62,000 bases of DNA from Octopus vulgaris (lineage: Eukaryota): the NCBI GenBank assembly GCA_951406725.2, contig OX597823.1:38212001-38274000 (forward strand), written 5' to 3'. Shown piece after piece: positions 2,169 to 59,275 of this stretch. A model generated the notes under the pieces. The model worked only from the letters and a program-made list of their open reading frames with translations. It did no database searches and was not told where the DNA came from. Within the stretch, counting starts at the first letter, position 1; each line of letters opens with the position of its first letter. Made by a program: the position numbers and the translations under genes.

Positions 2169-2660
2169 CAGGGGTTGCACAAAATAATGGAAACACCTTA
2201 AAATTTCAAACAAATTTATTTTAATATTGGGTAGGACTGCTTTGGCAGTAATTACAGTTTGAAGTCTTTGAGGTATGACTTGTACAAAGTTTGAATTGTT
2301 TCCAAAGGAATTTTTGTCCATTCTTCAGCTAAAACAGTCTCCCGCTCTGGTAGTGATGACTGTGGAGGATATCGACTCCTTACTTGTTTTTCTAAAATGA
2401 TCAATAAATGTTCAATAATATTGAGATCTGGGGACTGTGGTGGCCAAATAAGAAGTTCACCTTCACTAGAATGTTCCTTATGCCATTCGGTAACAACTCT
2501 AGCTGTGTGAATTGGTGCATTATCATCCTGAAAGATTGCATTTCCCTCCGAAAACAGTTCCGCAACCATAGGATGAATTTGATTAGATAAAATGCTTAAA
2601 TAGTCTCGACTATTAATTCTACCATGAAGAGAAACCATTGGGCTGGCGAATTTCCAAGAT
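2169..2660 (-). mobile_element. Tc1-family DNA transposon, right end
   Basis: ORF 2252-2638 has FQDDNAPIH and WPPQSPDLNIIEHL (Tc1 DD34E catalytic region); terminal CAGGGGTTGCACAAAATAATGGAAACACC follows a TA at 2167-2168. Confidence 0.9.
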
Positions 2661-2719: not shown

Positions 2720-3600
2720 CAGATATAGTTAAAGGTACCTCATATATAAATATTTAGACATATAATACTTAAACTGCTGTATGTAACCATCCTATTCTCA
2801 TACTCACTTGTTGTCTCTTGCTCTAGATGTTGGTTGGGGTGGGGAGAAACAGTGTACCAAAGTTCTATGCTTGCTGGCAAGTGTTTTCGCAGATATTCTT
2901 CATTTCAGGTGATGACAAAATTTCCACAACTATTTTGCTATCACCACTCCCAAGTACTAAATCTCAGTGTCGCTACTATCAATATTGGCACAATGAAAGG
3001 AAGGAGCAGGGAGATGATTGAAATGCTGGAGCAATGCCATGTTGATGTGTGTAGTGTGCAAGAAATAAGATGGAGTGGAGCCTCAGCTAGATTCCTCATG
3101 GGTAAGAGACAGAGATTCAAATTCTTCTGGATCAGCAGGGAAGATGGAGTAGGTAGTGTAAGCATACCGTTAGCAGAAAAATGGGCAGATAAGGTAATTG
3201 AGGTAGTCAGAGTATGTGATAGGGTAATTACGAAGAGACTTATCATAGGTAAATTAACAGTTACATTTATCTCTGCCTATGGTCCTCAGTTTAGGCTGAG
3301 TGGAAAGACCAATTTTATGAGCCCCTTTTGCAGACCACCTTAAAAAAATGACAGAAATTTGTTATTGTGGCTGGTAACTTCAATGGACAAGTTGGACTGC
3401 ATCCCCATGGATTCCAGGGAGTGCATGGGCTCTGTGGGTTTGGACCTAGAAATAAGGAGGGAACAAGACTGCTGAAGTTCTGTGATGCAAATGATCTCAT
3501 GATCTGCAACACTAACTTAAAAAAAACAGCCAGCCACCTAATCATTTATCAGTCTGGTGAGCACAGAAGCCAGATTGACTACCTCCTCACCAGGCAACAC
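2720..3600 (+). mobile_element. RTE-clade LINE, AP-endonuclease fragment
   Basis: ORFs 2834-3343 and 3367-3771 give ATINIGTMKGRS..VQEIRW..ISAYGPQ..GNFNGQVG..RNKEG..SQIDYLL, the APE motifs of RTE elements, split by a frameshift. Confidence 0.9.
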
Positions 3601-3873
3601 GAGAATTGTTTTGGCTGCCATTTTCCCAACAGAAAACAGAATTTCATAGAAGCATGCTGTGACTTCATTTCAGCCATCGCAAAAATCAACGAACAGGTGA
3701 GAAACATTGCAAAACAAAGGTGCACCACATGGCAGTATGACTTCACTCGATGCTGCTGGCTGGCACACTGATGCCTGGGGGTCACATCAAATGGCTTCTC
3801 GTGGTAGAAGCCTGAACTACAATAGACTTGTCCTACAGAGAACATTTCAGGTTACTTTTGGGTATCCCCTCTT
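3600..3873 (-). mobile_element. mariner transposon, left end
   Basis: Minus strand MAEMKSQHASMKFCFLLGK resembles the mariner N-terminus; TIR-like segment 3845-3873 matches the one at 4090-4115. Confidence 0.75.
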
Positions 3874-4215: not shown

Positions 4216-4574
4216 AATCATGATATATGTTTCTGCACTCCACATCAACTTTAAGTTGCTGGGTTCATATTCATATAGCATTATGTAAGATTACTCTTAA
4301 TAATTACTATGTATTTGAATATTGTTCAGCAACAGCTGTCTGTGGGTGCTTCATTGGGTGAAGTCCAATTAAGAACTGCTTAATTTTTCTGAATTTACCA
4401 TGTACAATACTTTCCATCTATCAAATAATTACATTCCAGTGGTAGGTGGTGTTTATGAATAACAAACTGAAAAACTCATCACATTAATGGCAACAACAAT
4501 AACTGTGTAACAGTTAATAAAATGGTTAATATTTTCTTCAGACTTTGCTTTTGTTACATTTATTCAAATCCCAA

Positions 4575-4945
4575 AGAATTTCTCTCAACACATGGCTATT
4601 ATACTCCCCCACAATTCCTGCTAATGATCAAAGATGCATATATTGTCAGCCACTGAGGGATATGCTCAAGTGGTTAAGGTCAAGCAAGTGACATGTATAT
4701 TTGTAGTATTGAGCAGAATATTTGCTAAAACGATATTTCTGCTTCAGCAACTCAGTACTTAATCTGTCTGAATTGTAATGGAAAATAAGTCAGTTTCAAA
4801 AGATTGATCTACAGGTCACAAAAGCAAAGTTTGAAGGGAATAGTAGTAATTTCATTTGATTTCTATATAGAATCAAATAGGAAATAACACTTACTGAACA
4901 AAGACAAAAATAAATAAATAAAAATTTTGTTACACAGTGTAATAC
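4575..4945. repeat. Interspersed repeat family E, copy 1 (long match to 58905-59275)
   Basis: About 370 bp alignable by eye with 58905-59275; first ~170 bp also shared with 50060-50220 and 61395-61570. Confidence 0.8.
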
Positions 4946-8887: not shown

Positions 8888-10015
8888 ACTTTGATACTTT
8901 GATAGGTTTCGGCCATCATTGGCCCAGGCCATGTCTAACTTAATAGCACCACCTGGTGAAGTCTTTCAAGTTGAATTTGGGCACTATGGCCCACTCAAAT
9001 AGAGAGTTATTGTTTACAGAGACATATCCGGGTGTAGGGGGTTTATCCGGGATTTCTTGAAGGAATCTGTCCAAAGACTTCTTGAACCCTATAGGGTCAG
9101 TTTCTATTTTAATGTGTTTTGGTGTAATGTTAGAGAGCGGGGCCAATTGAGGTGAAATAATTGTGCCGTATTGTTGTTATGAGATGAGAGTGCGATTTTT
9201 GTTTTGGGCGGATGGCACGGGGCCCAAGCCTTGGATGTACCTTGAAGGTGATGCCAACATCATTTGGGCAATGCTGATGGAATATTTTCCACATCATGCA
9301 GATGATGTAGCGCTCACGACGACGTTGGAAAGAATAGAGTTTTAGCTTTTCTAGTCGACCCCAATAGTCGAGGCCTGTCATGCCATCTATCTTTTTTGTG
9401 ATTGCCCTTTGAGGTGCTTCAACTTTTATGATACCTTGTATTGTGTGGGGAGACCACAGTGGACAACAGTATTCAAGGTGGGGTCGGGCAAAAGTGGAGA
9501 AGAGAAGGATAATGGTGTGGATATCTCTCGACTGGAAAGTTCTGAGAATCCAGGAACACATTCTGCGGGCCATGTCAACTTTGGTGTTTATATGAGTGGC
9601 CCAGCTTATGTTGTTGTCCACAATTACTCCCAAGTCTCTGATGTTGTTGGACGCCGCGAGAGTTTCACCTGAAGGAAGGGAGTATGGGAGTTTCAGGGCA
9701 TCCTCTTTTCCAAAGTGGATTAGCTCAAATTTATCCTCGTTCAGCAGCATATTGTTTTTTTCTGCCCATTGGATAACAGCCAGTAGATCTGACTGAAGGC
9801 ATGTCCGGTCACTCGCCTCAATTATGACCTTCTGTAGCTTGGAGTCATCTGCAAAGATTTTTATGTTGCTGTGCTTGATGATGTCATTAATATCATTAAT
9901 GTAAATGATGAAAAGAAGTGGGCCCAGCACAGTGCCTTGCGGAACGCCACTACTGACTTTGGCTGGGCTTGATTTTACCCCTTCAACTACAACATGTTGA
10001 GATCTGTCTGTCAGG

Positions 10016-10018
<3 letters not shown>
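8888..10018 (-). mobile_element. CR1-clade LINE, 5'-truncated, reverse-transcriptase C-terminal half and 3' end
   Basis: ORF 9130-10245 contains GVPQGTVLGPLLF, FADD, DLGVIVD and RPHLEYC..WSP; frame continues past one stop into ORF 8940-9146; ends in (TATCAAAG)x2 octamer tail; both ends abut (TA)n. Confidence 0.95.
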
Positions 10019-10053
<35 letters not shown>

Positions 10054-10054
10054 C

Positions 10055-10102
10055 AAAAACTGTCCGATGAATGGCAACGGGAAACTCAGAGTAACAGGTT
10101 TT
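10055..10102 (+). ncRNA. Hammerhead-like motif in a 75-bp island between (TA)n tracts
   Basis: AAAAACTGT-CCGATGA-ATGGCAACGG-GAAA-CTCAGAG-TA-ACAGGTTTT: stem I and stem III pair; U4C change and weak stem II. Confidence 0.5.
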
Positions 10103-10129
10103 GTTGAATTTTCTGCTGCTTTAAATAAA

Positions 10130-10221
<92 letters not shown>

Positions 10222-11611
10222 ATATATATACACATATTCTAGCATACATGCACTGAGCTTCTTTCAGTTTCTGTCTACCACATTCACTCACGTGGCTTTG
10301 ATTCACCTGGGGCTACAATAGATGCTCGCCCAGATGCCACATATTGAAACTGAACCTGAAACCAGGTATGGGAAGCAAATTTCTTAGCCAAACAGCCATC
10401 CCTCAATATCTATGATAACTGTATTGTCAAATTCTTTCATTGTAAGAGTGTTGGAAAGGCCGTTCTCTGGTGTGAGCAAAGTTCATGGTAGTCAGTAGGT
10501 TGAAAGAAAGTAGAGATCCAGCAAAGATTTCTTGGTGCTTGGACGTTTGTATGATAATCTTTTGTGAGGTAGGATCTTGAGAATTGTTTTATCTGGCAAG
10601 AAAGATATGAAAAGCTACAGTCAATCAAACATAGCCATCAAGAACTAAATGTATGCAAGTAAAAGGAGACAAACCACAAAAACTTGAGTTTATAGTTTTT
10701 AATTTCCCTAGCAAACATGAATTCACATTTATCTTCTGTTGCATATCTGAGATTAAGGCTTCATATTATGTAAGACATCATTAATGAAAATGGCCTGGTC
10801 TCTTAATCTAGTGCATATATTTACAAAGATAAACAGTATCCATCTTTTTTCACTTAAAAAACCCCACCATCAATATTAATCTTTTTAACAAATAAACATC
10901 CAAAATATGATAATTTCTCTTCAGATTGGTACAAAAGCAAAGATTTACTGAACTGTTGGTAGAATCAATTGAATCAATCACTGCATCTTATTGTAAATTA
11001 TTATTTTATTGATCTTAGAAGCAAGGAAGACAAAATCAAAAGATAGTGTGAGGTTAGAAATAAATTTCCTTTGTAAAGACATGCCAGAGTGAACTGACTG
11101 ACTAAATCCCCAGTTTATCCTTAAAGTGATCAACTTGATAGAAATACTGAGATAAGATAAGGTTGCTTGGAAATAGGTTGTTATGTAAGATAGCTTGAAG
11201 TGAGAATTATGATGAGGATGATGATGGTGGTGGTGGTGGTGGTGGTGGTGGTGATAATGATAGTAACAATTTCAATGACAATGACAATGCTACTGCTGCT
11301 GCTGCTACTACTGCTGCTACTGCTGATGCTACCACCACTGATGTTGATGATGATGACAGTTACAAAGAATAAATGAAAAACAGAAGACTGGTAAAAACTG
11401 TCAGGAATTACATTTGGGAATTTTTGTTCTATTACTTGTGGAAGAGGGAAACCCAAGAAGTCCTTGTGTTCGTGTTTGTCGTGCCATAATCACTTGACAA
11501 CCAGTGTTGGTTTGCATATGTCCTTGTAACTTAACAGTTCAACAAAAGAGAATAAGTACTAGATTTCAAAGTAATATAAGTACTGGGATTGATTCGTTTG
11601 ACTAAAACCTT

Positions 11612-14018: not shown

Positions 14019-14801
14019 ATATATATATATACTATTTTCATATTTTTATTACTTGCTCTAGCTGTTTTTTTATGAATATGATGAATCTTTATTAGAAATC
14101 AGTCTTTCTCTCTTTTTGGACCTATCAAAAAGTTTGAATTGTTCTCTTCTGAACTTACTTTTTCCCTATATATATATGTCAGTTTCTGCCTACCAAATCC
14201 ACTCACAAGGCTTTGGTCAGCCCAAGGCTATAGTAGAATACACTTGCCCAAGGTGAACCTAGAACCATGTGTTTGGGAAGCAAGCTTCTTACCATACAGC
14301 TATGCCTATGTTGTGCTACAGAAGATTCCTAATTATTATCTATGTTGTGTCTTGGATTGTGTTCCATTAAGTTATTTATATGTATACATTTAAATATAAA
14401 TAATATAAGTTAACAAGAATATATGAAAGCTCAAATAAATATTGGCATGGTCATTGATGTCTTCACACCCAACCTGCCAAATATTGTGAATTACCAATGG
14501 AGAATATATTACTAAACTGCTTGCTAACATGATGAGGTCATTGTGTAATTGCTAAACCTGCTCAGTCAGGAGGTGTTACTTCAATTATTGAAGATCATTT
14601 TATTGATAATTGGCAGTGTTGATGAATTTTCATGTCTTATGTTATTAAGTGATTACTGAGTGAACCAATGAGAGAGAGAGTGAGAGTATGTGTGTGTGTG
14701 AGAGAGAGAGAGAGAGACAGAGAGCTAGCTTCTCACAAATTCTTGACTTACTAGAAGTCACAGCTACTTTCTTTAATCAAGAAGGATACAGTATATCTAT
14801 C

Positions 14802-20505: not shown

Positions 20506-20550
20506 TGTATGTATATATTTTTATATGTGTGTGTATATATATATACATAT

Positions 20551-21490
20551 ATAGGAAAAAAGCAACAAGAATGGATTAAAATCTCGGTACGATCGTTTCG
20601 TACGAGGACATCTTTAATAAGCTACAAAAAATGCAGTGAATACAGATGGCTCGTACTCGTCAGCCGAAAAACATCAGAGAATTCCCAAACATCAAAAGGG
20701 GTAGATACAAAAGAGGTTGTAAGATTAGCTGCATTGAAGAAAGTTCGATTCGTGGAGATCCGATGAAAGGTTTTAAAGCTATAGAATTTATGCATGTCTA
20801 CATATAGCTCATATTGAATATTTGATCAAGTTGTGTGAAGAAATTTTCGGATACAGTCATGCAAAATTTCTGAAAATCCCGCTACAATATAAGACTGTCA
20901 TTTTGCTTCTCATTTGGATTCCCTGATATTTTTCGCATGATTGTACCCTAAATCTCTTCACAAAACTGGATTATGAACTATAAGGACATACACATATTTT
21001 GTAAGTTCAAGACTTTTTCATCGGATCTCCAAAAAATCGAACTTATCTGCGATTCTTGTAAATGTCAATAACAATCTGTTCCTCTACACGATATGACAGT
21101 CACTTTGCTTTTACTCAGACTTTCCTCTACATGATATGGCAGTCACTTTGCCTCTTACTCGGATTTTCAGAAATTTTGCATGACTGTATCCGAAAATTTC
21201 TTCACACAACTTGATCAAATATTCAATATGAGCTATATGTAGACATGCATAAATTCTATAGCTTTAAAACCTTTCATCGGATCTCCACGAATCGAACTTT
21301 CTTCAATGCAGCTAATCTTACAACCTCTTTTGTATCTACCCCTTTTGATGTTTGGGAATTCTCTGATGTTTTTTCGGCTGACGAGTACGAGCCATCTGTA
21401 TTCACTGCATTTTTTGTAGCTTATTAAAGATGTCCTCGTACGAAACGATCGTACCGAGATTTTAATCCATTCTTGTTGCTTTTTTCCTAT
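20551..21490. mobile_element. Young foldback element with near-perfect 329/330-bp inverted arms
   Basis: 20551-20879 is the reverse complement of 21161-21490 except one A/T-run indel (base-by-base check); 281-bp spacer. Confidence 0.95.
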
Positions 21491-21607
21491 TTGTAATCAC
21501 CCCACTTGTCGTATGGTTAACACCATATAGATTTCCGGTGCATCCTAGTTAAGGACCATATTCAAGTGAATTCTTTAGAATTCACTAGAATCTCAATTAC
21601 TTAACCG

Positions 21608-21826
<219 letters not shown>

Positions 21827-22847: not shown

Positions 22848-22984
22848 AAATGATGAGGAATTATGTGCATTATTTACATTTGAAGGATATTTCATCTTGT
22901 TTCGGATGATATACCCTCCAGCCTTCATCAGTTATCTTGAGGGAAATTTCAAACCTGAGTTCTCATTCCTAAGGTATTTTTTGA

Positions 22985-23073
<89 letters not shown>

Positions 23074-23313
23074 TCACTGCCTGGAATCAAACTTGGGATC
23101 TTGGCGTTAGTAGCCCAAGATTCCAAGTTCGATTCCAGGCAGTGTCCTGAATAATGATAATAATAATAATAATAATGATAATAATAATAATAATAATAAT
23201 AATAACATCGAAAAAGACCTTAGGAATGAGAACCCATGTTTGAAATTTCCCCAAGATACCTGATTAAGGCTGGAGTGAGGACAAACATCCATCAAATGTA
23301 AATAATGTAAATA
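22848..23313. mobile_element. Head-to-head hairpin of a tRNA-headed, (AAT)n-containing element with hammerhead-like tail
   Basis: 22861-23104 pairs with 23115-23313 around a 10-nt spacer; B-box-like AGTTCGATTCC at 23126-23136; CTGATGA..GAAAC on minus strand at 22899-22931. Confidence 0.85.
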
Positions 23314-23635: not shown

Positions 23636-24105
23636 AAATTACAGTCTTAAAGATATCGTTAAATTCCATGAATTAACAAGAAGAGTGAGATGGAAGGCTC
23701 TCTTCGATGATAAATAACAGAGTACAGAAGAGAACTTATCCAATAATACCAACGAGGAACTTACCAAAATTAGAAGCAATTTTAAATCTAGAAAAGTCCC
23801 CCCAGCAAACTGAAAATTAGAAAATTTTGAAGATAGTGTATGGAAACTACTTAAAAATATCAAATTTAAGAAAAACCATATATTAAAGTACAAATTCAAA
23901 GAGCTTAGTAAATTATATATATATATATATATTACATACATGCATACATACGAAGTGCTTCTTTCAGTTTCCCTCAAATAAATCCACTCACAAGGCTTTG
24001 GTCGGACCATGACTATAGAAGATACTTGCCCAAGGTGCCACACAGTGGGACTGAACCTGGAACCATGTGGTTGGAAAGCAATCACACAGCCACTCCTGCA
24101 CCTAT
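23335..24105 (-). mobile_element. Bipartite SINE family B (head 23945-24105, tail 23335-23520) split at its internal microsatellite
   Basis: Head and tail halves match intact copies at 41690-42108 and 47045-47445; a PLE fragment sits between them. Confidence 0.8.
23640..23910 (+). mobile_element. Penelope-like element, N-terminal ORF remnant
   Basis: VKFHELTRRVRWKALF..FKSRKVPPAN*KLENFEDSVWKLLKNIKF resembles the conserved N-terminus of PLE ORFs; two stops; bounded by (TA)n. Confidence 0.7.
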
Positions 24106-24249
24106 AAATATATATACATATATATATATATATATACAAATATATATGTATACATGTATGTATGTGTGCGTGCATACATGTGTGTATGTGTGTATTTGAG
24201 TAGAAATGCAGAAATAATAGAAACATTAGTTGGCTCATATTCCACGAGG

Positions 24250-24930
24250 GTGATCCCACCAAGGGAAAATCTGGCATTGTCAGAGGCAGATCCAGCTGGT
24301 TTCCTCGAATGTTTCCTAAACCAGGATGAGTGTTAGATTCATCACTTTGAGTCAAAGACAAAGAAGCAATCAATGTAGTGGGAAACCCTACCTCACCTGT
24401 TTCAAAGAAAACCAAGGTTGTTTCATCTGCAGGAAAAGTGATGGACTCTGTTTTTTGGGGGGTATGTAAAAGGCATTGTGTTTAACTATCTTTGAAAGGG
24501 CCACACTATCAATGGAGAATACTATGCAAACTTGCTGAGGCAGTTATCAAAGGCTATCAAGAACAAACACCAGGAAAACTGACAAAAAGGGCCTTGTTTC
24601 TTCAGCACAATGCTCCAACACACAAGTCCTTGGTTTCAATGGCTGCTCTGCATGACTGTGGCTTTGAACTGGTTGATCAGCCTCCCTATTTTCCCAATTT
24701 GCTCCCATCTGACTATCATTTGTTCCCCAACATAAAAAAAAAACACTTGGCTGGGAACCAGTATTGCAGTGATGAGGACAACATATCTACTGTTGATGAC
24801 TTTTTTGACCAACAGGATGACAGCTCCTTCACCAATGAGATCCAAGTACTGCAACACTGATGGAAGGAATGTGTGGACTGCTAGAGGGACTATGTTGAAA
24901 AGTAAACCTCATTTGGTCACATTCCAATAA
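24250..24930 (+). mobile_element. mariner transposase catalytic fragment (D,D34D)
   Basis: FLTQDE-like motif near 24320, SAGKVM, FLQHNAPTHKS, PPYFPNLLPSDYHLF, and C-terminal ..*WKECV..DYVEK*. Confidence 0.9.
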
Positions 24931-30337: not shown

Positions 30338-31840
30338 GATGCTCTGTACAGTTTCTGTCCACAAAAATCATTTACAAGGCATTATCAGTTGGCCCAAGAC
30401 AATTGTAGAAGACACGTGTCCAAGGTGCCACATTATAGGACTGAATCTGAAACTCTGTGATCATGAAGTGAACTTCTTAACCACGCAGCCTGTACATGCT
30501 CATGAGTAAGAAATCCAGTTGCCTATTCCTCTTCCAAATGCAAATTCTAGTGAAGGAAAATAAAATGGTAGAAATATTTAGTTTATATTATATAAAAAGG
30601 GTTGGTAAATTATCAAATGTAATAAAGGGTTAATAGATTAAGATTTTATTATATGTAATAAGAGTTAATAGATTAAGATTTTTTTCCTTATTCGCTAAGG
30701 GTTAATAAGTTGACTCTTTATAAATTAAATGCTTATCATGTATCATAAGGGTTAATACATTCGTCTGTTATAGAAGGTGGTGAGTTGGCAGAATCATTAG
30801 CACACCTGGTGAAATGCTTAGCAACATTTCATTTATCTTTATGTTCTGAATTCAAATTCTGCCAAGGTTGACTTTGCCTTTCATCCTTTCAGTCTTGATA
30901 AAATAAGTAACAATTGAGCACTGGATGGCAGGGGAAGGGGGGGGGGCAACGTAATCCCCTGAAGTTTTTGGCTTTTTGCCAAAATTTGAAACCTACACAT
31001 TAATATGCTATTATTTGTCCAAGTGACAAAACACGGGTGTTTTCAGTTAGATTCACATTACAAAAAATGCAGTTTAAGGTTTTCTGACACAAAAAATGTA
31101 GGTAGTTGTATAAATGATCTAAACTTTGTAAGTAGTCAGATAAATGTTATATTTAGATGAATATTGTTTAGGCCACTAAACACACTGTTTAGTTACAGTG
31201 TTATTTTGTTTAAATTTATACCTGTATATGTTTAATTTTGTAGAAGGGATTGTAGGGGACAAAATATGAAGATGATGCAATAACATCAAGGACTGGATGG
31301 GAGGACTCTGATGAAGTGTATGACTAGCATGAGAGCAGTGTAAGGTGAGGAGTGGGTACTGTGTCTGAGCCACAGGGAAAGATTTTGGCAGAGTGTGTGT
31401 GTGTGGGGGGGGTGTATTTTAGCAAGTTTTATATTATGGTTGGTTACAGAGTGACCATTGATTTCGCCCCTATGAAGTACTTAGCTGTGTAGGTGACTTG
31501 TCAGACTCAAATGGCCAAAAGCACATAACTTCTTGAATTCAGTGAGTAGCTTAAACTGCTAAGCGCTTTGTTGGTGCAAAACCAATGGTCACTTTCTGAA
31601 TGGCCGTAACTTTTTACTTCTTAAAAATATATTACTGCTCTAATGCTTTAAAGTATGCTTCTTTTTCCGATGTATGAACTACCGACGATTTCTATATAGG
31701 TGCAAGAGTGGCTGTGTGGTAAGAAGCCTGCTTTCTAACCACATGGTTCTGGGTTCAGTCCTACTGTGTGGCACTTTGGGCAAATGACTTCTACTATAGC
31801 TTCAGGCTGACCAAAGCCTTGTGAAACTGAAAGAAGCCTG

Positions 31841-31878
<38 letters not shown>

Positions 31879-31884
<6 letters not shown>

Positions 31885-32422
31885 TAATATCAGGGTAAGA
31901 AAAAATTTTAGAAATTTTTACTACCAGTGGTCTTGAAAAATTATAATATATAAGCATGGAGCACATGCTGGATTGCCTCGTATTTATATGTTTAATCTAG
32001 GTATACCTGATGATGAAGACTTTACCTAGCAAATTATTTTATTTGCTAATTTAAAGTCAGAAACCATGGTCCGGGAAATAGATGGTAAATGTTTTTATTT
32101 TTCATTCTCTTCGAAATTTATCCACAATAGTGGTTTGGATTTTGGCTATTCCTTCTAGTGTGCCAGGTATCCTATGATTGATACCTCTTATGTGTTTAAA
32201 TGTAGACAGTATTTATATGAATAATATATAGTCTATTGACTAATTTTTCTACATGCTAGGCCACTGGTAGTAAAAATTTCTAAAATTTTTTCTTACCCTG
32301 ATATTATTAATTATTGATAAATTTTCTGTCAAATTTTCAAAGTAACACCGACATTATTTTATATGCTGCCGATAAAAAACTGCGCTTGCACGGTGGATTT
32401 GAAAAATTATAATATATAAGCA
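31879..32422 (+). mobile_element. Small non-coding hammerhead-bearing element with terminal direct repeat and upstream inversion
   Basis: 24-bp direct repeat 31933-31956/32399-32422; perfect 52-bp inverted repeat 31879-31930/32261-32312; hammerhead fold at 31995-32083; (TA)n on both sides. Confidence 0.8.
31995..32083 (+). ncRNA. Type-I hammerhead ribozyme-like motif
   Basis: Stem I ATCTA..CCTG / CGGG..TAGAT; core ATGATGA; stem II GACTTTA/TAAAGTC with inner TAGCAAAT/ATTTGCTA; GAAA; palindromic stem III ACCATGGT; GTC cleavage triplet ending at 32071. Confidence 0.65.
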
Positions 32423-32429
32423 CTGTATT

Positions 32430-32460
<31 letters not shown>

Positions 32461-32604
32461 GTATAAGGAAAAATAAGAAAAGACAATATCGCATCTTACA
32501 ACTGTTTCTATTTGCACTATTTTGGGCATAATCAGTAATTCATTGGATACAAATATCCCTTAGACAGTTTTTATAACCTCTAACTGAACTCACCTATATA
32601 TATA

Positions 32605-32635
<31 letters not shown>

Positions 32636-32863
32636 TTGTGCATCTATGTTTGTCACTCCACTATCACTTGACAACCAATATTGGTGTCTTGTTTAAATCC
32701 CTGTAACTTAGTGGTTCAGCAAAGAGATCAATAGAATAAGTACTAGTCTTACAAAGAATAAGTCCTGAGGTTGGTTCCTTTGACTAAAGGCGGTGCTCAA
32801 ACATGGCCACAGTCAAATGAGTGAAACAAATAAAAGAATATATGTATACACACACATGCATAT

Positions 32864-32896
<33 letters not shown>

Positions 32897-33351
32897 AGGT
32901 TTATTACATGGATAGGTATGAGATATGTGGCCTTATAGTTCGGGTACTAGATTTACAATAGCAAGATGATGGTTTTGATTCCCAAATTGGTGCATTGTGT
33001 TCTTGAGTAACACACCTTATTTCATATTGTTCAGTGATCACTTTGAACAGAAAATGTCATTTTGATGGAGGGAGTGAGCTAATGTACAGCACACACGTTT
33101 GATAAATTTAAACAAATCATCCATGCAAATTGTTCAGCAAGAAGTTGCACAGTTCTCATCTGTTGTATACAGTAAAAGGGTCCACAAAATGACAAGCATC
33201 TTTTCAGTTTCTTTCAGCTTTGGCCATCCCAGGGCTATAGTAGAGAACACTTGCCAAAGGTGCCATGCAGCAGGATGGAACCCAAAACAAGGTGGTTAGA
33301 ACAAACTTCTCAATGCCTGCATATACACATACACATACACATACATACATA

Positions 33352-33465
33352 CATTATGGCTGCCCCCTCGTTATCGAGAATGGCCATTGCACGAAGCTTA
33401 ACTGTTACTGGTGCTGTGATCGAATGTGACTTTTTAGCCCAGCTAAAGATCTACAATGTATTGTA
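33352..33465 (-). mobile_element. RTE-clade LINE extreme 3' end
   Basis: Minus strand HCRSLAGLKSHIRSQH followed by a short UTR, same C-terminal motif class as 625-962 and 43900-44850. Confidence 0.65.
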
Positions 33466-33594
33466 CATACATACATACATACATACATACATACATACAT
33501 ACATACATACACACACATACATACATACATACATACATACATACATACATACATACATACATACATACATACATACATACATACATACATACAT

Positions 33595-34105
33595 AGAAAT
33601 CTGCAGTTACTCTATCCAGATTGCAAGTTCAGGTTTATACCTGTAATTGTTGGAACCTTGAGATCTGTAACACACTGCCTAAATACCAATCTTGAGAAAT
33701 TAGGCTTCTCAAAACCAGAAAGGAGAAAGCTAATTTGAAGACTACAGATCATATCCATCACTGGAACTGTAAAAATATGTAAAACTTTCCAGAAGTTTAT
33801 CATTTAAATATATATATGAGCATGTCTAGATATGCTGCTATATGCATGAAAATATATACATAAAGCAAAACATATAAATCTGCACATATACATCCATCCA
33901 TCCATCCATCCATCCATCCATCCATCCATCCATCCATACATACATACATACATACAGACAGACAGACAGACAGGCATACATACATACATACAAACAAACA
34001 AACAAACAAAAATACCCTGTTGTTGATGTTGAAATTCCAATGAAGGAGCCTTGAATTTAGGTTAGAAACCAGCTCTTTATTAGCAAGAAATCTTGAAATG
34101 AAACT
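33595..34105 (+). mobile_element. RLE-type non-LTR retrotransposon 3' end between (TACA)n tracts
   Basis: LQLLYPDCKFRFIPVIVGTL..LEKLGF..LI*RLQIISITGTVKICKTF resembles the C-terminus of restriction-like-endonuclease elements. Confidence 0.55.
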
Positions 34106-41689: not shown

Positions 41690-42108
41690 TCTTTTACTTG
41701 TTTCAGCCATGTGACTGTGGCCATGCTGGAGCACCACCTTTAATCGAGCAAATCAACTCCAGGACTTATTCTATGTAAGCCTAGTACTTATTCTATTGGT
41801 TGCTTTTGCCGAACCGCTAAGTTACGGGGACGTAAAACACCAGCATCGGTTGTCAAGCGATGTTGTGGGGGACAAACACAGACACACAAATATATATACA
41901 CACACACACACATGTACATACATACATATATATATATACATATATTCGACGGTTTTCTTTCATTTCTGTCTACCAAATCCACTCAGAAGGCTTTGGTTGG
42001 CCTGAGACTATAGTAGAAGACACTTGCTCAAAGTGCCATGCAATGGGGCTGAACCCAGAACCATGTGGTTTGTAAGCAAGCTACTTACCACACAGCCACT
42101 CCTACACC
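41690..42108 (-). mobile_element. Intact bipartite SINE family B
   Basis: tRNA-like head (GGCTGTGTGGTAAG..GGTTCAGCCCC), CORE-like TTGAGCAAGTGTCTT, internal (TA)/(TG) tract, tail ending ..GACTGAAACAAGTAAAAG-like. Confidence 0.85.
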
Positions 42109-42389
42109 TATAAAAGAAGATTCGACCTTGACCGAATTTGAACTCAGAACACAAGACGGACAAAACACCGTTCTTCATTTTCCCCGACGTGTTAACGATT
42201 CAGCCAGCTCGCTGCCTTGAATAAATATATTCATTTATTTTTAAGTAACAATTTGTAAATGGCAGTGTTATTAATTACAGATATCTATTGGGACAATCAC
42301 TGATTCGCACTTCAGATGATGGGAGTGATGAGGGAGTGCTTGTAACTTATTGCAGAACAAATTCCAATGGGGGACCTTGTTTGAAGATC

Positions 42390-47044: not shown

Positions 47045-47190
47045 GTGGCTGTGCTTTCCAACCACATGGTTCTGGGATCTCTCCCACTGTGTGGAATCAT
47101 GGACAAATGTCTTTTACTATAGCTTCAGGCTGACCAAAGCCTTGTGAGTGGATTTGGTTGACGAAAACTAAAAGAAGCCTATTGTATATA

Positions 47191-50271: not shown

Positions 50272-51515
50272 TATTATTTCACATACACACAACAGATTAA
50301 CTGTTGGAAAAGATTTCCTAACATCGGGCTGCAACAAGTAACCTTACATGCCAAGAACCTTCCTAAATATCCTACATGTCCCTAATAACACTGTTTTCTG
50401 GAGCTGCACTAAACTAGGCTTTATGCCTAATTCCTCTATCTATCTATATATCTCTTCAAATCTTTAGGGCTAGTCCCTAATGCATTTATAACAAGAGAGA
50501 TATATTTTATTTGCACTTTCTATAGCCTCTGCAACTCAGTGGCTAGGTTCTGGTACTTTGCTATTTTCTCTATACCTCTCATATTGACTTTCTTATCACT
50601 TGGGACTGTAAAGTCAATTACTTGGCATTTTCTATTCTCTTTGTCCAATACTATATTCTACTCAGTCAGTCTGAATGCAAAAATTCCACAACATCTTTTA
50701 TTTCTAAAACTTTCTTAGACTTTATTAGGTTCATGTTCATACCATTTATCAGTATAGTAAAATCCTAGCATTCTATGTAAATCCAAATGGATTAATCTCC
50801 CTAGGTTTTCCTGTCTTTTCTTGTATTCTTTCTGTCCCAGCAGCATGCTACATTCATTTACTATATGAGTAACACTTTCCGTTTCTTGATTTACATGACC
50901 AACATTGGGAATCTACCTGATTTTTGTCTATTTTTGCTTTTATTCAATTAGTCCTCAATGCTTAATCTTGTGCTGCTCCTAACAAACTTATTACTATTAT
51001 TTGTTGAAAACTCTAGGCTTATTTTGTTGGGCATGATGGACAGTGTCAGCTGTCCACAGCCAGCAGACTAAGGTGACATTTGTTTACTGGTCATGCTTTA
51101 AGAACTCTGTGAAGAATTCTTGCAGTTCCAAGTAATGCTGATTTTTGCAGGTGTTCTACCTTTACACTTGTACCAATCATTTTGAACCATGTTGGTAGTT
51201 GGGTGCTGATACTTCCACGTGCACCAATTACTATTGGTATCATGTCTATTCTCCTCATTGACCACAACTTTTGTATTTTCTACATCAAATTGTCATACTT
51301 GTTCAGTTTTACTTTTTTTTTCTCTTTGATCCTGTTGTCACCGAGATATGCTATGTTGATTATCATGCAAGTTTTTCTTTGTCATTCACCAAAAAAATGT
51401 CCTGTTTCTGATGTCTGGTCAAGTGATTGCATCAAATCATTGCATCACACAGGAATTTTGCAATCTTCATTCTCGGTGACTCCTTCTGGGGTTTTCTCAT
51501 ACCACATCTTTGCTC
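50272..51515 (-). mobile_element. Two chained R4/Dong-like RLE-LINE 3' fragments (50272-50990, 51000-51515)
   Basis: Degenerate HEPNKV..F..D....P..K..E..PVVIGALG-like RLE motifs; each 3' end abuts TTA repeats; 51000-51515 is paralogous to 54780-55330. Confidence 0.8.
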
Positions 51516-51616
51516 TTTGTTATCTTGTATTATTATCATCATCACCATCATCATCATCATCATCATCATCATCACCACCACCATCATCATCATCATCATC
51601 ATCATCATCATATTAC

Positions 51617-52714: not shown

Positions 52715-55330
52715 TACTTTTAATCTGTATGTTTGTTACAATCATTTGCCGAGACACAACCCTTGTTACAATCACTTGCCAAGACACAGCCCTTGTTATA
52801 ATCACTTGCTGAGACACATCTCTTGATTTCACTTGCTCCGGCTAATTCTATAAGAGTGAACAACAGCCTGTTGTTAAGGTCTCACAGTGTCTCTTTCCAT
52901 GACACTTAACATCCATGTGCCAATCTCAAAATTCCTCAGTAATGCAGGTTTCTGAGAATTGTTCTGCCCCCATGTCAATCCCAATTTCTCCAACAAATTT
53001 CTCAGATCATGTTGGTAATGCTCCCAGTACCCCTACAACTACTGGGATGACAGTCACTTTCTTCATTGCTGATAGTCATAGAACCTTATCTTTTAGTGGC
53101 TTATACTTCTCAATCTTTTCCAGTTCTTTAGCATCAAATCATACAACTCCAAGTATGGCAATATCTATGATCTTGAAGGCGGCGAGCTGGCAGAAACGTT
53201 AGCATGTGGGCGAAATACTTAGCAGTATTTTGTCTGTCTTTACATTCTGAGTTGATAATTGAATGCCAGTTGTGTACTGGGTCGATCTAATCAACTGGCC
53301 CCCACTCTCCACAAAAATTTCGGGCCTTGTGCCATGACTATAAAAGAATATCTATGATCTTGATTTCCTTCATCATTTTTTCAACTACAACAATGTTTAT
53401 ATTATTATTATTTTCATATACACTCAACAGATTAGACTGTTGGAAAAGAAAAAATCCTAACACCAGGCTACAAGTAACCTAAGCACCTGATCTATTCGGA
53501 TTAGGAAATTCCATAAGATTTTGCAGGTCTCTGATTTTACCACTCCCTGTGGTTTGTGCTCAAACCACGTCTTGCCTACTTCTAGACCACACTTTTCACA
53601 CAGTTTCCAATGTAACACTTTCATTACTTTATTGTGTCACCTCAACTTGTACTAGTTTGGGCAAGCTGAGGGCATTCATTCATGATATGGGCAATGGTTT
53701 CATCAACTCTGGTGCAGTGGAAACACTTGCTCATTTCTAAGGTTGACCATCTAATTAGTGGCCAAAGCTTGATCTTGTACTACCAGTACTGTGCTCTCAG
53801 TTTCTTTTATCAGTGCTCATTTCTTTAGCCAGTCCCACCTATGTTTTCCAGCAGCTACATGGGATTGATTGTTTAGTCCCTTGTTGCATAGTGCTACTTC
53901 ATGTCCTTCTTGTACTTCTCGTTTTGTTCTTTTCTTTTTCCCTGATTTCAATCAGCCCTTATTTTTAACTGACCCTAGCAAGGTTTCCTCACATTGGGAT
54001 AGATACTTCAGCAGGTTCCTCTCTTCATGTATAGACTATATCTGTGCCTGCACATGGATGATGGGCTCCATGCATCGTTAGGCACTTTCTTGTCTTCCCA
54101 TCCTACTCTTTTAGTTCATCCTCCATCCACTTCCGAATTCCAGCCCCATACTGAACCACTTCAGCTGCATGCAAGTTTATTGTCAAAATTATGATTTTGT
54201 CATTCAACTTTGAATTCAAAATTTTTCTCAATTGTTGATACTCGTCTTTTCTTTCCTTTCATATTATTATTATCATTCTATGTTTGACTTTTGCTTTATG
54301 TCTGTACAAGTTGGCTCCAAGTCTCACCCAGAGACCTCAAGAGACAACAGGTTGGAAGTTCTGTGCCATATATTTGGGTTTTTTTTTTTTTTTGGTGTTG
54401 TACTAGTGAATGTCTAATACATAAAAATAAAATTAAAAAAAAAAAAAAATAAATAAATAAAAAAGTTCGTTTTAAACCTTGGGATTACATAGAGAGTATT
54501 TTGCGTAGGATATGAGCAGTTCCCATGAGCACTATCTTTTGAATTTCTGCCATTTTGGGGTTTCCTGGTATCTGAGTTAGGTAGCAATCAGTCCCTTTTC
54601 GCTATCATTCCCAGGGCACCTATGACAACAGGTATTGTTTTAGTCTTCAGCTTTCACATTTTGCTGATTTCTATTTCAAGATCTTTATATTTGCTCAGTT
54701 TTTGGTAGGTCTTGACAGATACGTTTATATCGATTGGGACAGTCATTATTAATATTATTATTATTATTATTATTATTATATGAAGACTCACAGCTTATTT
54801 TGCTGGGTATGGTGGACAGTGTCAGCTGTCCACAGCCAGCAGACTAAGGTGACATTTGTTTACTGGTCATGCTTCAAGAACACTGCAGAGAATTCTTCCA
54901 TTTCTAAGCAATGCTGATTTTTGTAGGTGTTCTACCTTCACACTTGCACCAATCTTTTTTCAGCCATGTTGGTAGTTGAGTGCTGATACTTCCAAGTGCA
55001 CCAACTACTATTGATACCACATCTACTCTTTTCATTGATCCCAACCTTCATATTTCCCACTTCAAATTGTCATAGTTGTTTTATTTTTTTCTTCTTGTTT
55101 CACATTGATCCTGTTGTCACCAGGGTGTGCTATGTTGATTATCATACATGTTCTTTCTTTTTTATTCACCACAACAATGTCTGGTCAGATAATTGCACTG
55201 GGTCATTGCATCCCACAGGATTTTGCAATTTTCATTTTCAGTTACTCCTTTTGGATTTTGCTCATACCACGCCTTTGCTCTTTGTAGGCTGTGATTTCCA
55301 CAGAGCTCCCAATGGAGCCATCATCATTGT
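52713..55330 (-). mobile_element. Four chained R4/Dong-like RLE-LINE fragments (52713-53385, 53410-54150, 54255-54745, 54780-55330)
   Basis: RLE C-terminal motifs such as KIEKYKPL..KKVTVIPVVVGVLG and DMTVP..LSKYKDL; every 3' end abuts (TTA)n; 30-bp x3 tandem in the first 3' UTR (52733-52822). Confidence 0.85.
53177..53346 (+). mobile_element. SINE family A with 17-bp target-site duplication
   Basis: AATATCTATGATCTTGA at 53160-53176 and 53347-53363. Confidence 0.9.
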
Positions 55331-58335: not shown

Positions 58336-58904
58336 CTATTATAATAGATATGTAGAGTAAGTATTAAAAGGATTTCCTGACGCAGTTGATTGTATGAAAA
58401 ATCTACCCTAGCACTTATGTTATGTCTATCAAAATTATGATATTTAATACAGGAAAAGTCAACTGACTCGGTTGTTATTCAGTAACAGCTAGGTATGGAT
58501 CAGAGGTGAGGAGCCTTTCTAATGCCTGGGGCAAACTGAAAGTGCTGAAGTACCCATAGGGTTGTTTGTACCTGTTTTGAGAAAATAATGAATCTAATTT
58601 TATAAATTCATAGGTATGGCATTGGTAGTCAATTACTTGCTCCTAAGGTTTAAGCTGTTCCTTGTAGATTTTTAGAGATATTGTTTGTATTTGTATATCA
58701 TTTTAAATTTAAATACAGGCAAAATTTCACTGGCAGTTAATGGTGGTGGTGGGGAACCTCTTGTCCAAATGATTAGTTATTGCTGATATTTTCCTGAATT
58801 ACACTGTGTATCACGATTTTTATCCTTGGGTAGCAACTGTTCCCTAGAAAGCATAAGAATGGCTAATATTTCCTTCAAACTTTGCTTTTGTTACATTTAT
58901 TCAA

Positions 58905-59275
58905 GCCTTAAAGAGTCCCTCTCAATACATGGCTATGAAGTTCCCCACAACTCTTGCTCATCGTCAGAGATGTACATATTATCAGCCTCTAAGGGACATG
59001 TTCAAATGGTTAAAGTTAAGCAACTCTGTGGTATAGAGCAGAATATTTGCTATAACTACACTTCTGTTTCAGCAACTCAACACTGAATCTGTCTGAAATG
59101 TAATGGAGACTAGGTCAGTTTCAAAACATTTACGTCCAGATCACAAAAGCAAAGTTTGAAGGGAATAGTAATCATTTCCTTTGATTTCTAGATAGAAGAA
59201 ATAGGAAATAGCACTTACTGACCAAAGACAAAAGATAAATAAATAAATAAATAAATAAATGTTTTGTTACACAGT
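58905..59275. repeat. Family E copy (long match to 4575-4945)
   Basis: Alignable by eye over about 370 bp. Confidence 0.8.

What the first reader, a model, noticed from the sequence alone, without database searches (positions are those of the whole stretch)
31879..32422. Retrozyme-like 466-bp unit: best hammerhead fold, terminal direct repeat and upstream inversion
Seen: a non-coding unit bounded by a 24-bp direct repeat (31933-31956, 32399-32422; period 466 bp), preceded by a perfect 52-bp inverted copy of an internal segment (31879-31930 vs 32261-32312), inserted in (TA)n. It holds a complete type-I topology: stem I with bulge, 7+8-bp stem II, palindromic ACCAUGGU stem III and GUC site at 32071. 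Deviations are C3A and an extra A before GAAA. Established: animal non-LTR retrozymes are small hammerhead elements that yield circular RNAs, and PLE insertions show terminal redundancy and 5' inversions. Inference: a monomer copied from a circular or concatemeric RNA by PLE reverse transcriptase, i.e. a candidate cephalopod retrozyme family.
Basis: partly seen in the sequence, partly recalled or inferred. Interest (0 to 1): 0.82.

Follow-up and report, generated by a model that had tools for sequence, protein, structure and literature searches.

The report
Hammerhead-like Penelope-type retroelement insertion
A 543-bp non-coding insert in the (TA)n tail of an octopus-type SINE has the anatomy of a Penelope-like retroelement insertion and carries a flawed hammerhead ribozyme motif, so it is probably a dead single copy of a known kind of parasite-of-a-parasite, with no evidence here that it makes RNA circles.

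Summary
The 24-bp direct repeat (period 466), the perfect 52-bp (really 54-bp) inverted copy and the (TA)n flanks are all at the stated coordinates and far beyond chance.

New findings:
- A likely ~42-bp target-site duplication brackets the insert.
- The inverted and direct parts join at a GTGG microhomology.
- The hammerhead-like motif has every hallmark of Penelope-element hammerheads: 7-bp helix II, 4-bp helix I, an unpaired base after A9, G10.1-C11.1 and a palindromic helix III.
- It still has A instead of the essential C3, and an extra A before G12.
- It is not the best hammerhead in the window. Two canonical-core copies lie at 20588-20663 (-) and 21378-21453 (+), in a second insertion of the same architecture.

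Structure-aware scans find hammerhead-type motifs only in these two insertions.

Best reading: a non-autonomous unit with 466-nt periodicity, inserted by a Penelope-type reverse transcriptase/endonuclease that primed on both nicked strands.

"Retrozyme" is only partly supported. This locus has one defective ribozyme and 1.06 units, the window holds no second copy, and no collection I could search holds the host genome. A circular template, a tandem template or template jumping all explain the redundancy. It would be a new member of a known kind; interest is moderate to low.

The parts
31838..31879 (.). Left copy of the candidate target-site duplication: CTGTCA(TA)18, the 3' tail of the SINE at about 31680-31837.
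   Evidence: It is 42 nt against 43 nt on the right, and both copies are preceded by AAGC. Other SINE copies in the window end in the same ...GAAGCC(T/C)GTC(A/G)TATATA tail.
31880..31930 (-). Inverted partial copy of unit positions 32261-32312. Identity runs on through TA at 31877-31879, which overlaps the (TA)n.
   Evidence: Exact 52/52, and 54/54 with the TA microhomology.
31927..31933 (.). Junction between the inverted and direct parts. The observed GTGGTCT lies between GTGGCCT (continuation of the inverted template) and GTGGATT (continuation of the direct template), which marks a microhomology-mediated join.
   Evidence: junction print-out.
31933..31956 (+). Upstream copy of the terminal direct repeat. 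It is the last 24 nt of the unit (30 nt at 28/30 from 31927) and plays the role of a very short pseudo-LTR / partial tandem.
31957..32422 (+). One 466-nt unit: 30% G+C, no reading frame longer than 42 codons, no relative elsewhere in the window.
32006..32075 (+). Hammerhead-like motif of type I, PLE style: CCUG / AUGAUGA (A3 at 32010) / unpaired A 32017 / helix II G32018-C32058 (7 bp + 8 bp) / extra A 32059 / GAAA 32060-63 / palindrome ACCAUGGU 32063-70 / C17 at 32071 / CGGG.
   Evidence: Hallmarks compared with PMC4209133. No Rfam match, but Rfam also misses the canonical motif of the other insertion.
32261..32314 (+). Segment of the unit that was copied in inverted orientation. Its right end (about 32312-32314) is the inferred start of reverse transcription on the top strand.
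   Evidence: The model follows PMC11167929.
32313..32422 (+). 110-nt 'tail': the part of the unit present at the right end of the direct copy but absent from the outer end of the inverted copy.
   Evidence: Coordinates. The equivalent offset in the other insertion is 117 nt (21490 vs 21607).
32399..32422 (+). Downstream copy of the terminal direct repeat. Its end is the inferred start of reverse transcription on the bottom strand, with AAGC shared with the target.
32423..32465 (.). Right copy of the candidate target-site duplication: CTGTATT(TA)n..TGTATA.
   Evidence: The local alignment with the left copy has 3 mismatches and 2 single-base gaps over 47 columns, most of it (TA)n.

Best explanation
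The segment 31880-32422 is one retrotransposition product of a short non-coding element with 466-nt periodicity. It was mobilised in trans by a Penelope-like element (PLE) protein, which combines a reverse transcriptase with a GIY-YIG endonuclease.

Inferred mechanism:
1. The endonuclease made staggered nicks on either side of the (TA)18 tail of a SINE. That stretch was later duplicated as a ~42-bp target-site duplication.
2. The bottom-strand 3' end primed cDNA at the position now at 32422 and copied 496 nt. That is 1.06 units, so the last 24-30 nt appear twice.
3. The top-strand (TA)n 3' end primed a second cDNA 110 nt further in, at about 32312, and copied only about 52 nt.
4. The two cDNAs were joined at a GTGG microhomology. 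This gives the order inverted piece, short repeat, full unit.

The unit carries a descendant of the type-I hammerhead that PLEs keep in their pseudo-LTRs. In this copy the catalytic core has A at position 3 and an extra A before G12.

Consequences:
- The RNA of this copy is predicted to cleave poorly or not at all.
- With a single motif, the locus cannot release a unit-length RNA.
- It is best seen as a dead 'monomer' offspring of a non-autonomous PLE / retrozyme-type family.

Shown: the repeats, the junction, the flanks and the motif anatomy. Inferred: the enzyme, the order of events, the family and the loss of catalysis.
For: - Exact 24-nt direct and 52-54-nt inverted repeats, far beyond shuffles.
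- The repeat-defined ends abut (TA)n on both sides, with a 42/43-nt candidate target-site duplication that begins CTGT after AAGC.
- The junction has GTGG microhomology.
- PLE insertions are described as partial tandems with an adjacent inverted 5'-truncated copy, a one-sided 'tail' and a microsatellite/(TA)n bias (PMC8557442).
- A purified PLE protein nicks and extends both strands of AT-rich DNA and starts reverse transcription at internal sites. The tail is the sequence between those sites (PMC11167929).
- The motif matches the PLE hammerhead hallmarks: helix II 7-8 bp, helix I 4-5 bp, an unpaired nucleotide between 9 and 10.1, G10.1-C11.1 and palindromic 15.2-16.2 (PMC4209133).
- Three descriptor scans hit only three places in 62 kb on both strands: this motif and the two canonical hammerheads of the insertion at 20554-21607.
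- Chance gives about 0.2-0.26 loose hits per window and 0.008 of this quality. A reversed-sequence decoy gave one weak hit.
- That other insertion has the same anatomy: an inverted copy abutting a direct copy, an exact 14-bp target-site duplication TATATACATATATA, and a 117-nt tail.
- In both insertions the motif lies on the strand that would be the RNA sense.
- There is no coding capacity in the unit or within about 6 kb.
- Octopus genomes hold low-divergence PLE families that could supply the protein (PMC13282606).
- Retrozyme families of 51-972 bp with many dispersed monomers, related to PLE pseudo-LTRs, are described (preprint 10.64898/2026.07.22.740005).
Against: - Only one copy was seen. 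There is none elsewhere in the window and none in any reachable collection, so 'family' is an inference.
- No PLE ORF is in the window among ORFs of at least 120 aa.
- The core lacks C3. C3G or G8C abolish cleavage in a PLE hammerhead (PMC11167929).
- The repeats are undecayed (0 differences in 78 nt), so the defects were probably already in the template.
- The predicted minimum-energy fold pairs the core strand with the helix-III strand (probability 0.73-0.99). It is 6.8 kcal/mol below the hammerhead-type fold.
- The tail is 110 nt, against the 30-40 bp usually reported.
- The motif lies 241-351 nt from the inferred start sites. That is further than in the other insertion (37 and 154 nt) or in the studied anole element.
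- The two target-site duplication copies differ by about 5 changes, although they are mostly hypermutable (TA)n.
- There is no sequence homology with the other insertion beyond the motif.
Confidence: 0.6

Rival explanations
1. A true non-LTR retrozyme copy. The family lives as tandem 466-bp repeats, its RNA is cut by the hammerhead (as a dimer or helped by protein) and ligated into 466-nt circles. This locus would be a slightly more than unit-length cDNA of such a circle or concatemer.
For: - The direct part is 1.06 units long, as expected from copying a circular or multimeric template.
- Unit size, low G+C (30%) and lack of coding capacity fit the family (PMC7229834; preprint).
- The motif has a palindromic helix III of the kind that works in dimers.
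- The unit RNA folds somewhat better than shuffles (z = -2.4 and -2.6).
Against: - There is no tandem array here or anywhere in the window.
- The core has A3 plus an inserted A, and these were probably already in the template.
- The fold is branched, not the highly self-paired rod described for retrozyme circles.
- The repeat boundary is 115 nt away from the predicted cleavage site.
- In vitro, PLE insertion does not need hammerhead cleavage, and no reads ending at the cleavage site were found in the anole (PMC11167929).
Confidence: 0.12
2. A severely 5'-truncated copy of an autonomous PLE, consisting of pseudo-LTR/UTR only. The short terminal repeat would come from a template switch from an internal position to the start site of a second RNA, so there is no separate non-autonomous family.
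For: - 5' truncation, partial tandems and inverted copies are the rule for autonomous PLEs (PMC8557442).
- Hammerheads sit in their pseudo-LTRs.
- Octopus genomes have PLE families.
Against: - A periodicity of 466 nt with no ORF means the template repeated itself after 466 nt. An autonomous unit would be about 3 kb or more.
- The switch would have to land exactly at the same start site as the first cDNA.
- No PLE coding remnant adjoins the insert.
Confidence: 0.18
3. Not a PLE product. Either it is a LINE-mediated insertion with twin-priming inversion of some transcript, or it is a DNA-level event: replication template switching at a fragile (TA)n, or a MITE with 52-bp terminal inverted repeats and a TA duplication. 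The hammerhead likeness would then be fortuitous.
For: - Twin priming gives 5' inversions with microhomology and long target duplications.
- LINEs (RTE-type endonuclease, RT) and mariner fragments are in the window.
- (TA)n tracts are common, 49 in 62 kb.
- The inverted repeat alone resembles MITE ends.
Against: - A MITE model leaves the exact 24-nt direct repeat unexplained, and also the 110 nt between the right arm and the (TA)n.
- Twin priming on a single linear RNA does not duplicate the same segment in both orientations.
- There is no poly(A) or LINE-type tail at 32422.
- The chance that a loose hammerhead hit falls inside this 543-bp insert on the sense strand is about 0.001 to 0.002.
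- The only other such motif pair in the window sits in the only other insertion of this architecture.
Confidence: 0.1

Closest known systems
Penelope-like element insertions and their non-autonomous derivatives (pseudo-LTR partial tandems; e.g. the non-autonomous Chlamys elements such as MRC1 described in PMC8557442)
   Same: It shares the partial tandem giving a terminal direct repeat, the adjacent inverted 5'-truncated copy and a one-sided tail. It also shares the AT-rich/(TA)n target, a target duplication of variable length, a hammerhead-type motif on the sense strand and the lack of an ORF in the non-autonomous forms.
   Different: The repeat is only 24-30 nt and the tail is 110 nt rather than 30-40 bp. 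The hammerhead core is non-canonical (A3, extra A before G12). No autonomous partner or other copy was seen.
Animal non-LTR retrozymes (Cervera and de la Pena 2020, PMC7229834; Li et al. 2026 preprint)
   Same: It is a small, AT-rich, non-coding unit within the reported size range (51-972 bp) with a type-I hammerhead topology. Dispersed monomers are a described class of retrozyme offspring, and the family is thought to derive from PLE pseudo-LTRs.
   Different: There is no tandem array, only one motif, a defective core and no evidence of circular RNA. The unit boundary is not at the cleavage site.
Minimal/dimeric PLE hammerheads (Cervera and de la Pena 2014, PMC4209133; Lunse et al. 2017, cited in PMC6765202)
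   Same: Helix II is 7 bp and helix I is 4 bp. There is an unpaired nucleotide between A9 and G10.1, a G10.1-C11.1 pair, and a palindromic helix III that can only form between two copies.
   Different: Position 3 is A rather than C, and there is an extra A between C11.1 and G12. Helix II carries a further 8-bp extension. Covariation and cleavage are untested.
The insertion at 20554-21607 of the same window
   Same: It has the same layout: an inverted copy abutting the direct copy, (TA)n target, target duplication, a 117-nt versus 110-nt tail, and a hammerhead with a 7-bp helix II base, a long helix II insert and an 8-nt palindromic helix III on the sense strand.
   Different: There is no sequence homology. 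Its core is canonical (CUGACGA...GAAA...GUA). Its inverted copy is 326-329 nt rather than 52 nt, it has no terminal direct repeat, and its hammerhead is close to the 3' end.

Membership tests
Hammerhead ribozyme (type I) | Conserved core C3-U-G-A-N-G-A9 ... G12-A-A14 ... U16.1-H17 | tested here: not met
   The only register that gives helices reads A3-UGAUGA, with an extra A (32059) between C11.1 and G12. The true CUGAUGA at 32007-13 gives no helix I and only a 3-bp helix II.
Hammerhead ribozyme (type I) | Three helices around the core, with helix I open | tested here: met
   Helix I has 4 bp (+5 bp), helix II has 7+8 bp, and helix III is the palindrome ACCAUGGU. This quality is expected 0.008 times per shuffled window.
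Hammerhead ribozyme (type I) | Match to the curated covariance models (Rfam hammerhead families) | tested here: inconclusive
   There is no hit even at E<=10. The canonical-core motif at 21378-21453 is missed as well, so the models do not cover this long-helix-II, loopless-helix-III architecture.
Hammerhead ribozyme (type I) | Compensatory changes in the helices across copies | not testable with these tools
   No second copy exists in the window or in any reachable collection.
Hammerhead ribozyme (type I) | Self-cleavage after H17 | not testable with these tools
   This needs a bench assay. The thermodynamic prediction favours a non-hammerhead hairpin by 6.8 kcal/mol in the monomer.
PLE-type (minimal/dimeric) hammerhead | Helix II 7-8 bp, helix I 4-5 bp, unpaired nucleotide between 9 and 10.1, G10.1-C11.1, palindromic 15.2-16.2 / loop 3 | tested here: met
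   All five hallmarks are present: 7 bp, 4 bp, A32017, G32018-C32058 and CCAUGG (against PMC4209133).
Non-LTR retrozyme | Tandem repeats (at least 2 units), so that two ribozymes flank a monomer | tested here: not met
   The locus holds 1.06 units with one motif. Tandem Repeats Finder and self-BLAST find no array.
Non-LTR retrozyme | Small non-coding unit with low G+C | tested here: met
   The unit is 466 nt with 30% G+C, and the longest open frame is 42 codons.
Non-LTR retrozyme | Expressed as linear and circular RNA of unit length | not testable with these tools
   No transcriptome is available.
Non-LTR retrozyme | Multi-copy family in the genome | not testable with these tools
   The host genome is not in any searchable collection. 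All DNA and ORF-based searches returned nothing.
PLE-type insertion | Partial tandem (pseudo-LTR) giving terminal direct repeats | tested here: met
   The repeat is 24 nt exact, or 30 nt at 28/30, with period 466.
PLE-type insertion | Inverted 5'-truncated copy adjacent to the 5' end | tested here: met
   A 52-54 nt exact inverted copy abuts the direct part at a microhomology.
PLE-type insertion | One-sided 'tail' between two reverse-transcription start sites | tested here: inconclusive
   The outer ends of the inverted and direct copies differ by 110 nt, against a reported tail of 30-40 bp. The sister insertion shows 117 nt.
PLE-type insertion | AT-rich / (TA)n target with a variable target-site duplication | tested here: met
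   Both ends abut (TA)n, and there is a candidate 42/43-nt duplication. No empty site is available to confirm it.
PLE-type insertion | RT plus GIY-YIG endonuclease ORF (autonomous element) | tested here: not met
   There is no ORF in the insert or within about 6 kb, so it can only be non-autonomous or truncated. Degenerate remnants elsewhere in the window were not searched with a PLE profile.
MITE / TIR DNA transposon | Terminal inverted repeats at both element ends, flanked directly by the target duplication | tested here: not met
   The right arm ends 110 nt before the (TA)n and the candidate duplication. The exact direct repeat is left unexplained.

The most novel reading that the evidence does not exclude
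The unit belongs to a live cephalopod retrozyme family whose hammerhead naturally carries A at position 3 and an extra A before G12. It would still cleave, as a dimer in tandem transcripts or with help from the PLE protein, giving 466-nt RNA circles. That would be a natural, active variant of a core position held to be invariant.
Probability: 0.08. Interest if true: 0.6.

Novelty: new member of a known kind. Interest (0 to 1): 0.33.

Why it matters
Hammerhead-bearing Penelope-like elements and their non-autonomous retrozyme derivatives are well described in other animals, including a mussel. My paper searches found no report of hammerheads or retrozymes in octopus repeat annotations.

If genome-wide copies confirm the family, this window would add cephalopods to the list.

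The window also offers two clean, young insertions whose anatomy fits the recent in vitro picture of PLE integration: nicking and priming on both strands, and internal start sites. Each has an inverted copy joined to a direct copy, a target duplication, and a 110-117-nt offset between the two cDNA starts. That offset is a concrete prediction about where the responsible enzyme starts copying.

The finding itself is a dead single copy with a flawed ribozyme, so its direct biological weight is small.

Tried and rejected
- **Rfam.** Gathering scan of the whole window and E-value scans of the locus and the whole window gave no hammerhead hit. This is uninformative, because the canonical motif at 21378-21453 is also missed.
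- **Other copies in the window.** blastn with word size 7 found none.
- **Other copies elsewhere.** Exact-pattern scans of metagenome, viral and prokaryote-genome collections with pieces of this unit and of the canonical hammerhead gave 0 hits.
  - Exact look-up of ten small ORFs from both insertions found none on record.
  - Homology searches with the longest open frames of both insertions found no candidates.
  - No tool here reaches the host genome at the DNA level.
- **Homology between the two insertions.** None beyond the motif; local alignment scores fall within shuffles.
- **Rod-like fold of the unit RNA.** Only z = -2.4 and -2.6, and the fold is branched.
- **Alternative hammerhead register.** Using the true CUGAUGA at 32007-13 fails for helices I and II (and inspection).
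- **MITE reading, and reading the direct repeat as a target duplication.** Both were rejected because each leaves the other exact repeat unexplained.
- **Bacterial promoter/terminator and tRNA scans** of the region are irrelevant or empty.
- **The dimer energy** of a double hammerhead could not be evaluated, because the design is a pseudoknot for the energy function.

Full report
**1. The observation**

- TTGAAAAATTATAATATATAAGCA occurs at 31933-31956 and again at 32399-32422, 466 nt apart. The repeat extends to 30 nt with two mismatches.
- 31879-31930 is the exact reverse complement of 32261-32312. Identity continues for two more bases, giving 54 nt.
- In 200 shuffles of the unit, the longest exact direct repeat averaged 9.3 nt (max 13) and the longest inverted repeat 10.8 nt (max 22).
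- A pure (TA)18.5 tract ends at 31879, and an interrupted (TA)n starts at 32426.
- The unit has 30% G+C and no open frame longer than 42 codons.
- There is no other copy in the 62-kb window.

**2. The hammerhead-like motif**

Only one register gives three helices. In 5'-to-3' order it reads:
- CCUG (helix I, 5' strand)
- AUGAUGA (core, positions 3-9)
- an unpaired A
- GACUUUA...UAAAGUC (helix II, 7 bp, extended by a further 8 bp)
- an extra A
- GAAA
- CCAUGG
- UC, followed by the predicted cleavage site
- CGGG (helix I, 3' strand)

The genuine CUGAUGA three bases upstream cannot be used, because helices I and II then disappear.

Rfam finds nothing here even at E<=10. It also fails to find a canonical-core hammerhead elsewhere in the window, so that negative result carries no weight.

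My own descriptor gave these results:
- Allowing one core mismatch and one unpaired base on each side of helix II, it hits three places in the window on both strands.
- A second, differently relaxed descriptor hits the same three places.
- Dinucleotide shuffles give 0.26 loose hits per window, and 0.008 hits of the quality seen here (2400 shuffles).
- Local-composition shuffles give 0.19.
- The reversed sequence gives one weak hit.

The motif has every trait reported as typical of hammerheads in Penelope-like elements (PMC4209133):
- a long helix II (7-8 bp)
- a short helix I (4-5 bp)
- a G10.1-C11.1 pair
- palindromic positions 15.2-16.2

Two real defects remain: A instead of C at position 3, and an A inserted between C11.1 and G12. 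C3 pairs with G8 in the active site. C3G or G8C abolish cleavage in a PLE hammerhead (PMC11167929). That C3A is likewise strongly deleterious rests on the classical mutagenesis literature, which I cite from memory.

In the monomer, the predicted fold pairs the core strand with the helix-III strand. It is 6.8 kcal/mol more stable than the hammerhead-type fold. The canonical motif of the window does something similar as a monomer, but as a dimer it forms the intermolecular helix III.

**3.

The other two descriptor hits are identical canonical hammerheads: CUGACGA / GUACGAG...CUCGUAC / GAAA / CGAUCG / UA, then the cleavage site, then CCGAGA. They lie at 21378-21453 (+) and 20588-20663 (-). This finding is therefore not the best hammerhead fold in the window.

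These two motifs sit in the arms of a 329/330-nt, 99.7%-identical inverted repeat. That structure is an insertion spanning 20554-21607:
- It is flanked by an exact 14-bp target-site duplication, TATATACATATATA.
- It lies in a (TA)n-rich stretch.
- Its layout is an inverted partial copy abutting a direct copy.
- The direct copy runs 117 nt further at its outer end than the inverted copy does.

It shares no sequence with the finding apart from the motif architecture.

In a whole-window self-comparison, these two loci are the only near-perfect local inverted duplications. They are also the only places with hammerhead-type motifs. In both, the motif lies on the strand that would be the RNA sense.

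**4. Anatomy of the insertion**
- The left (TA)18 is the 3' tail of a SINE. Other copies of that SINE in the window end in the same ...GAAGCC(T/C)GTC(A/G)TATATA... sequence.
- To the right of the insert the sequence starts again with CTGTATT(TA)n, preceded by AAGC.
- So CTGTCA(TA)18 (31838-31879, 42 nt) and CTGTATT(TA)n...TGTATA (32423-32465, 43 nt) look like a target-site duplication that brackets the insert 31880-32422.
- The join between the inverted and direct parts reads GTGGTCT. This lies between what the inverted template (GTGGCCT) and the direct template (GTGGATT) would give, which is a microhomology junction.
- The outer end of the inverted piece overlaps the (TA)n by TA.

**5. Mechanism**

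The published picture of PLE insertion has these elements:
- Partial tandems form pseudo-LTRs, with an adjacent inverted 5'-truncated copy, a one-sided tail and a microsatellite bias, (TA)n in Naiads (PMC8557442).
- A purified PLE protein nicks and extends both strands of AT-rich DNA.
- It starts reverse transcription at internal sites of the RNA, and the tail is the stretch between those sites.
- Hammerhead cleavage is dispensable for insertion (PMC11167929).

Applied to this locus, the steps are:
1. Staggered nicks were made around the SINE's (TA)18.
2. A bottom-strand cDNA started at 32422 and ran 496 nt, which is 1.06 units.
3. A top-strand cDNA started at about 32312 and ran about 52 nt.
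4. The two were joined at GTGG.

This accounts for every repeat and both junctions. It is an inference from anatomy, not a demonstrated pathway.

The 1.06-unit length needs one of three things: a circular RNA, a transcript of tandem copies, or a jump from the 5' end of one RNA to the start site of another. One copy cannot tell these apart. The repeat boundary (31956|31957) is 115 nt from the predicted cleavage site. So if the templates were linear monomers, the hammerhead did not make them.

The repeats are undecayed (0 differences in 78 nt). The two core defects were therefore probably already in the template, not acquired after insertion.

**6. Rivals**
- **A true retrozyme copy.** This is possible but unsupported. 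There is no tandem array, one defective motif, a branched rather than rod-like fold (z = -2.4) and no RNA data.
- **A truncated autonomous PLE.** It would not be expected to repeat after 466 nt without any ORF.
- **A MITE, or reading the direct repeat as a target duplication.** Each leaves one of the exact repeats unexplained.
- **Twin priming by a LINE on one linear RNA.** This does not duplicate the same segment in both orientations, and there is no LINE-type tail.

**7. Context and novelty**

The window is a SINE- and microsatellite-dense, gene-poor stretch, with 49 (TA)n tracts and no meaningful ORF within about 6 kb of the insert. A LINE reverse-transcriptase ORF has its best named relative in Octopus sinensis at 69% identity. 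An octopod origin is therefore plausible, but the species is unknown.

Octopus genomes contain low-divergence PLE families (PMC13282606; PMC8967140). I found no paper reporting hammerheads or retrozymes in cephalopods.

Retrozymes as PLE-derived non-autonomous elements are already described, with 51-972-bp units and many dispersed monomers (preprint 10.64898/2026.07.22.740005). So this is at most a new member of a known kind.

**8. Limits**

Every attempt to find further copies failed, because no searchable collection holds the host genome. Family status, covariation, permutation, linkage to a PLE ORF and any RNA phenotype therefore remain untested. The decisive test is a simple genome-wide search with the 466-bp unit.

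Noticed in passing
window 20554-21607 (hammerheads 20588-20663 on the - strand and 21378-21453 on the + strand; target duplication 20540-20553 / 21608-21621): This is a second non-coding insertion of the same architecture, with two identical canonical-core type-I hammerheads (CUGACGA...GAAA...GUA) in the arms of a 329/330-nt, 99.7%-identical inverted repeat. It has an exact 14-bp target-site duplication and a 117-nt one-sided tail. It is a stronger hammerhead/PLE candidate than the finding itself, and Rfam misses it.
   Followed up: partly
window 32313-32422 and 21491-21607: In both insertions the direct copy extends 110 and 117 nt beyond the outer end of the inverted copy. That is about three times the 30-40-bp PLE 'tail' in the literature. 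The similar size may mark the spacing of two reverse-transcription start sites of one enzyme family.
   Followed up: no
window about 31680-31837, with relatives near 14179-14255, 23914-24116, 41983-42112, 47052-47147 and others: An abundant SINE family has 3' ends that run into (TA)n or (TR)n microsatellite tails. Many of the 49 (TA)n tracts in the window are such tails. ARAGORN finds no tRNA-like head in 31000-34000.
   Followed up: partly
window 22916-23042 / 23150-23275: A 127-nt inverted repeat (92% identical) has (TTA)n-rich arms around a 108-nt centre. It looks like a foldback or MITE and is unrelated to the finding.
   Followed up: no
window 2252-2638 (-), 24492-24860 (+), 2834-3771 (+), 9130-10245 (-): These are fragments of mariner-type transposases, a LINE endonuclease and a LINE reverse transcriptase. 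The best named relative of the reverse transcriptase is Octopus sinensis XP_029654199 at 69% identity, and the best hit overall is 75% on a contig of assembly GCA_024449705.1.
   Followed up: partly
window 50988-51520 vs 54764-55285, and 4517-4922 vs 58853-59247: These are longer dispersed direct repeats at about 82% identity. They are presumably other transposon families and were not examined.
   Followed up: no
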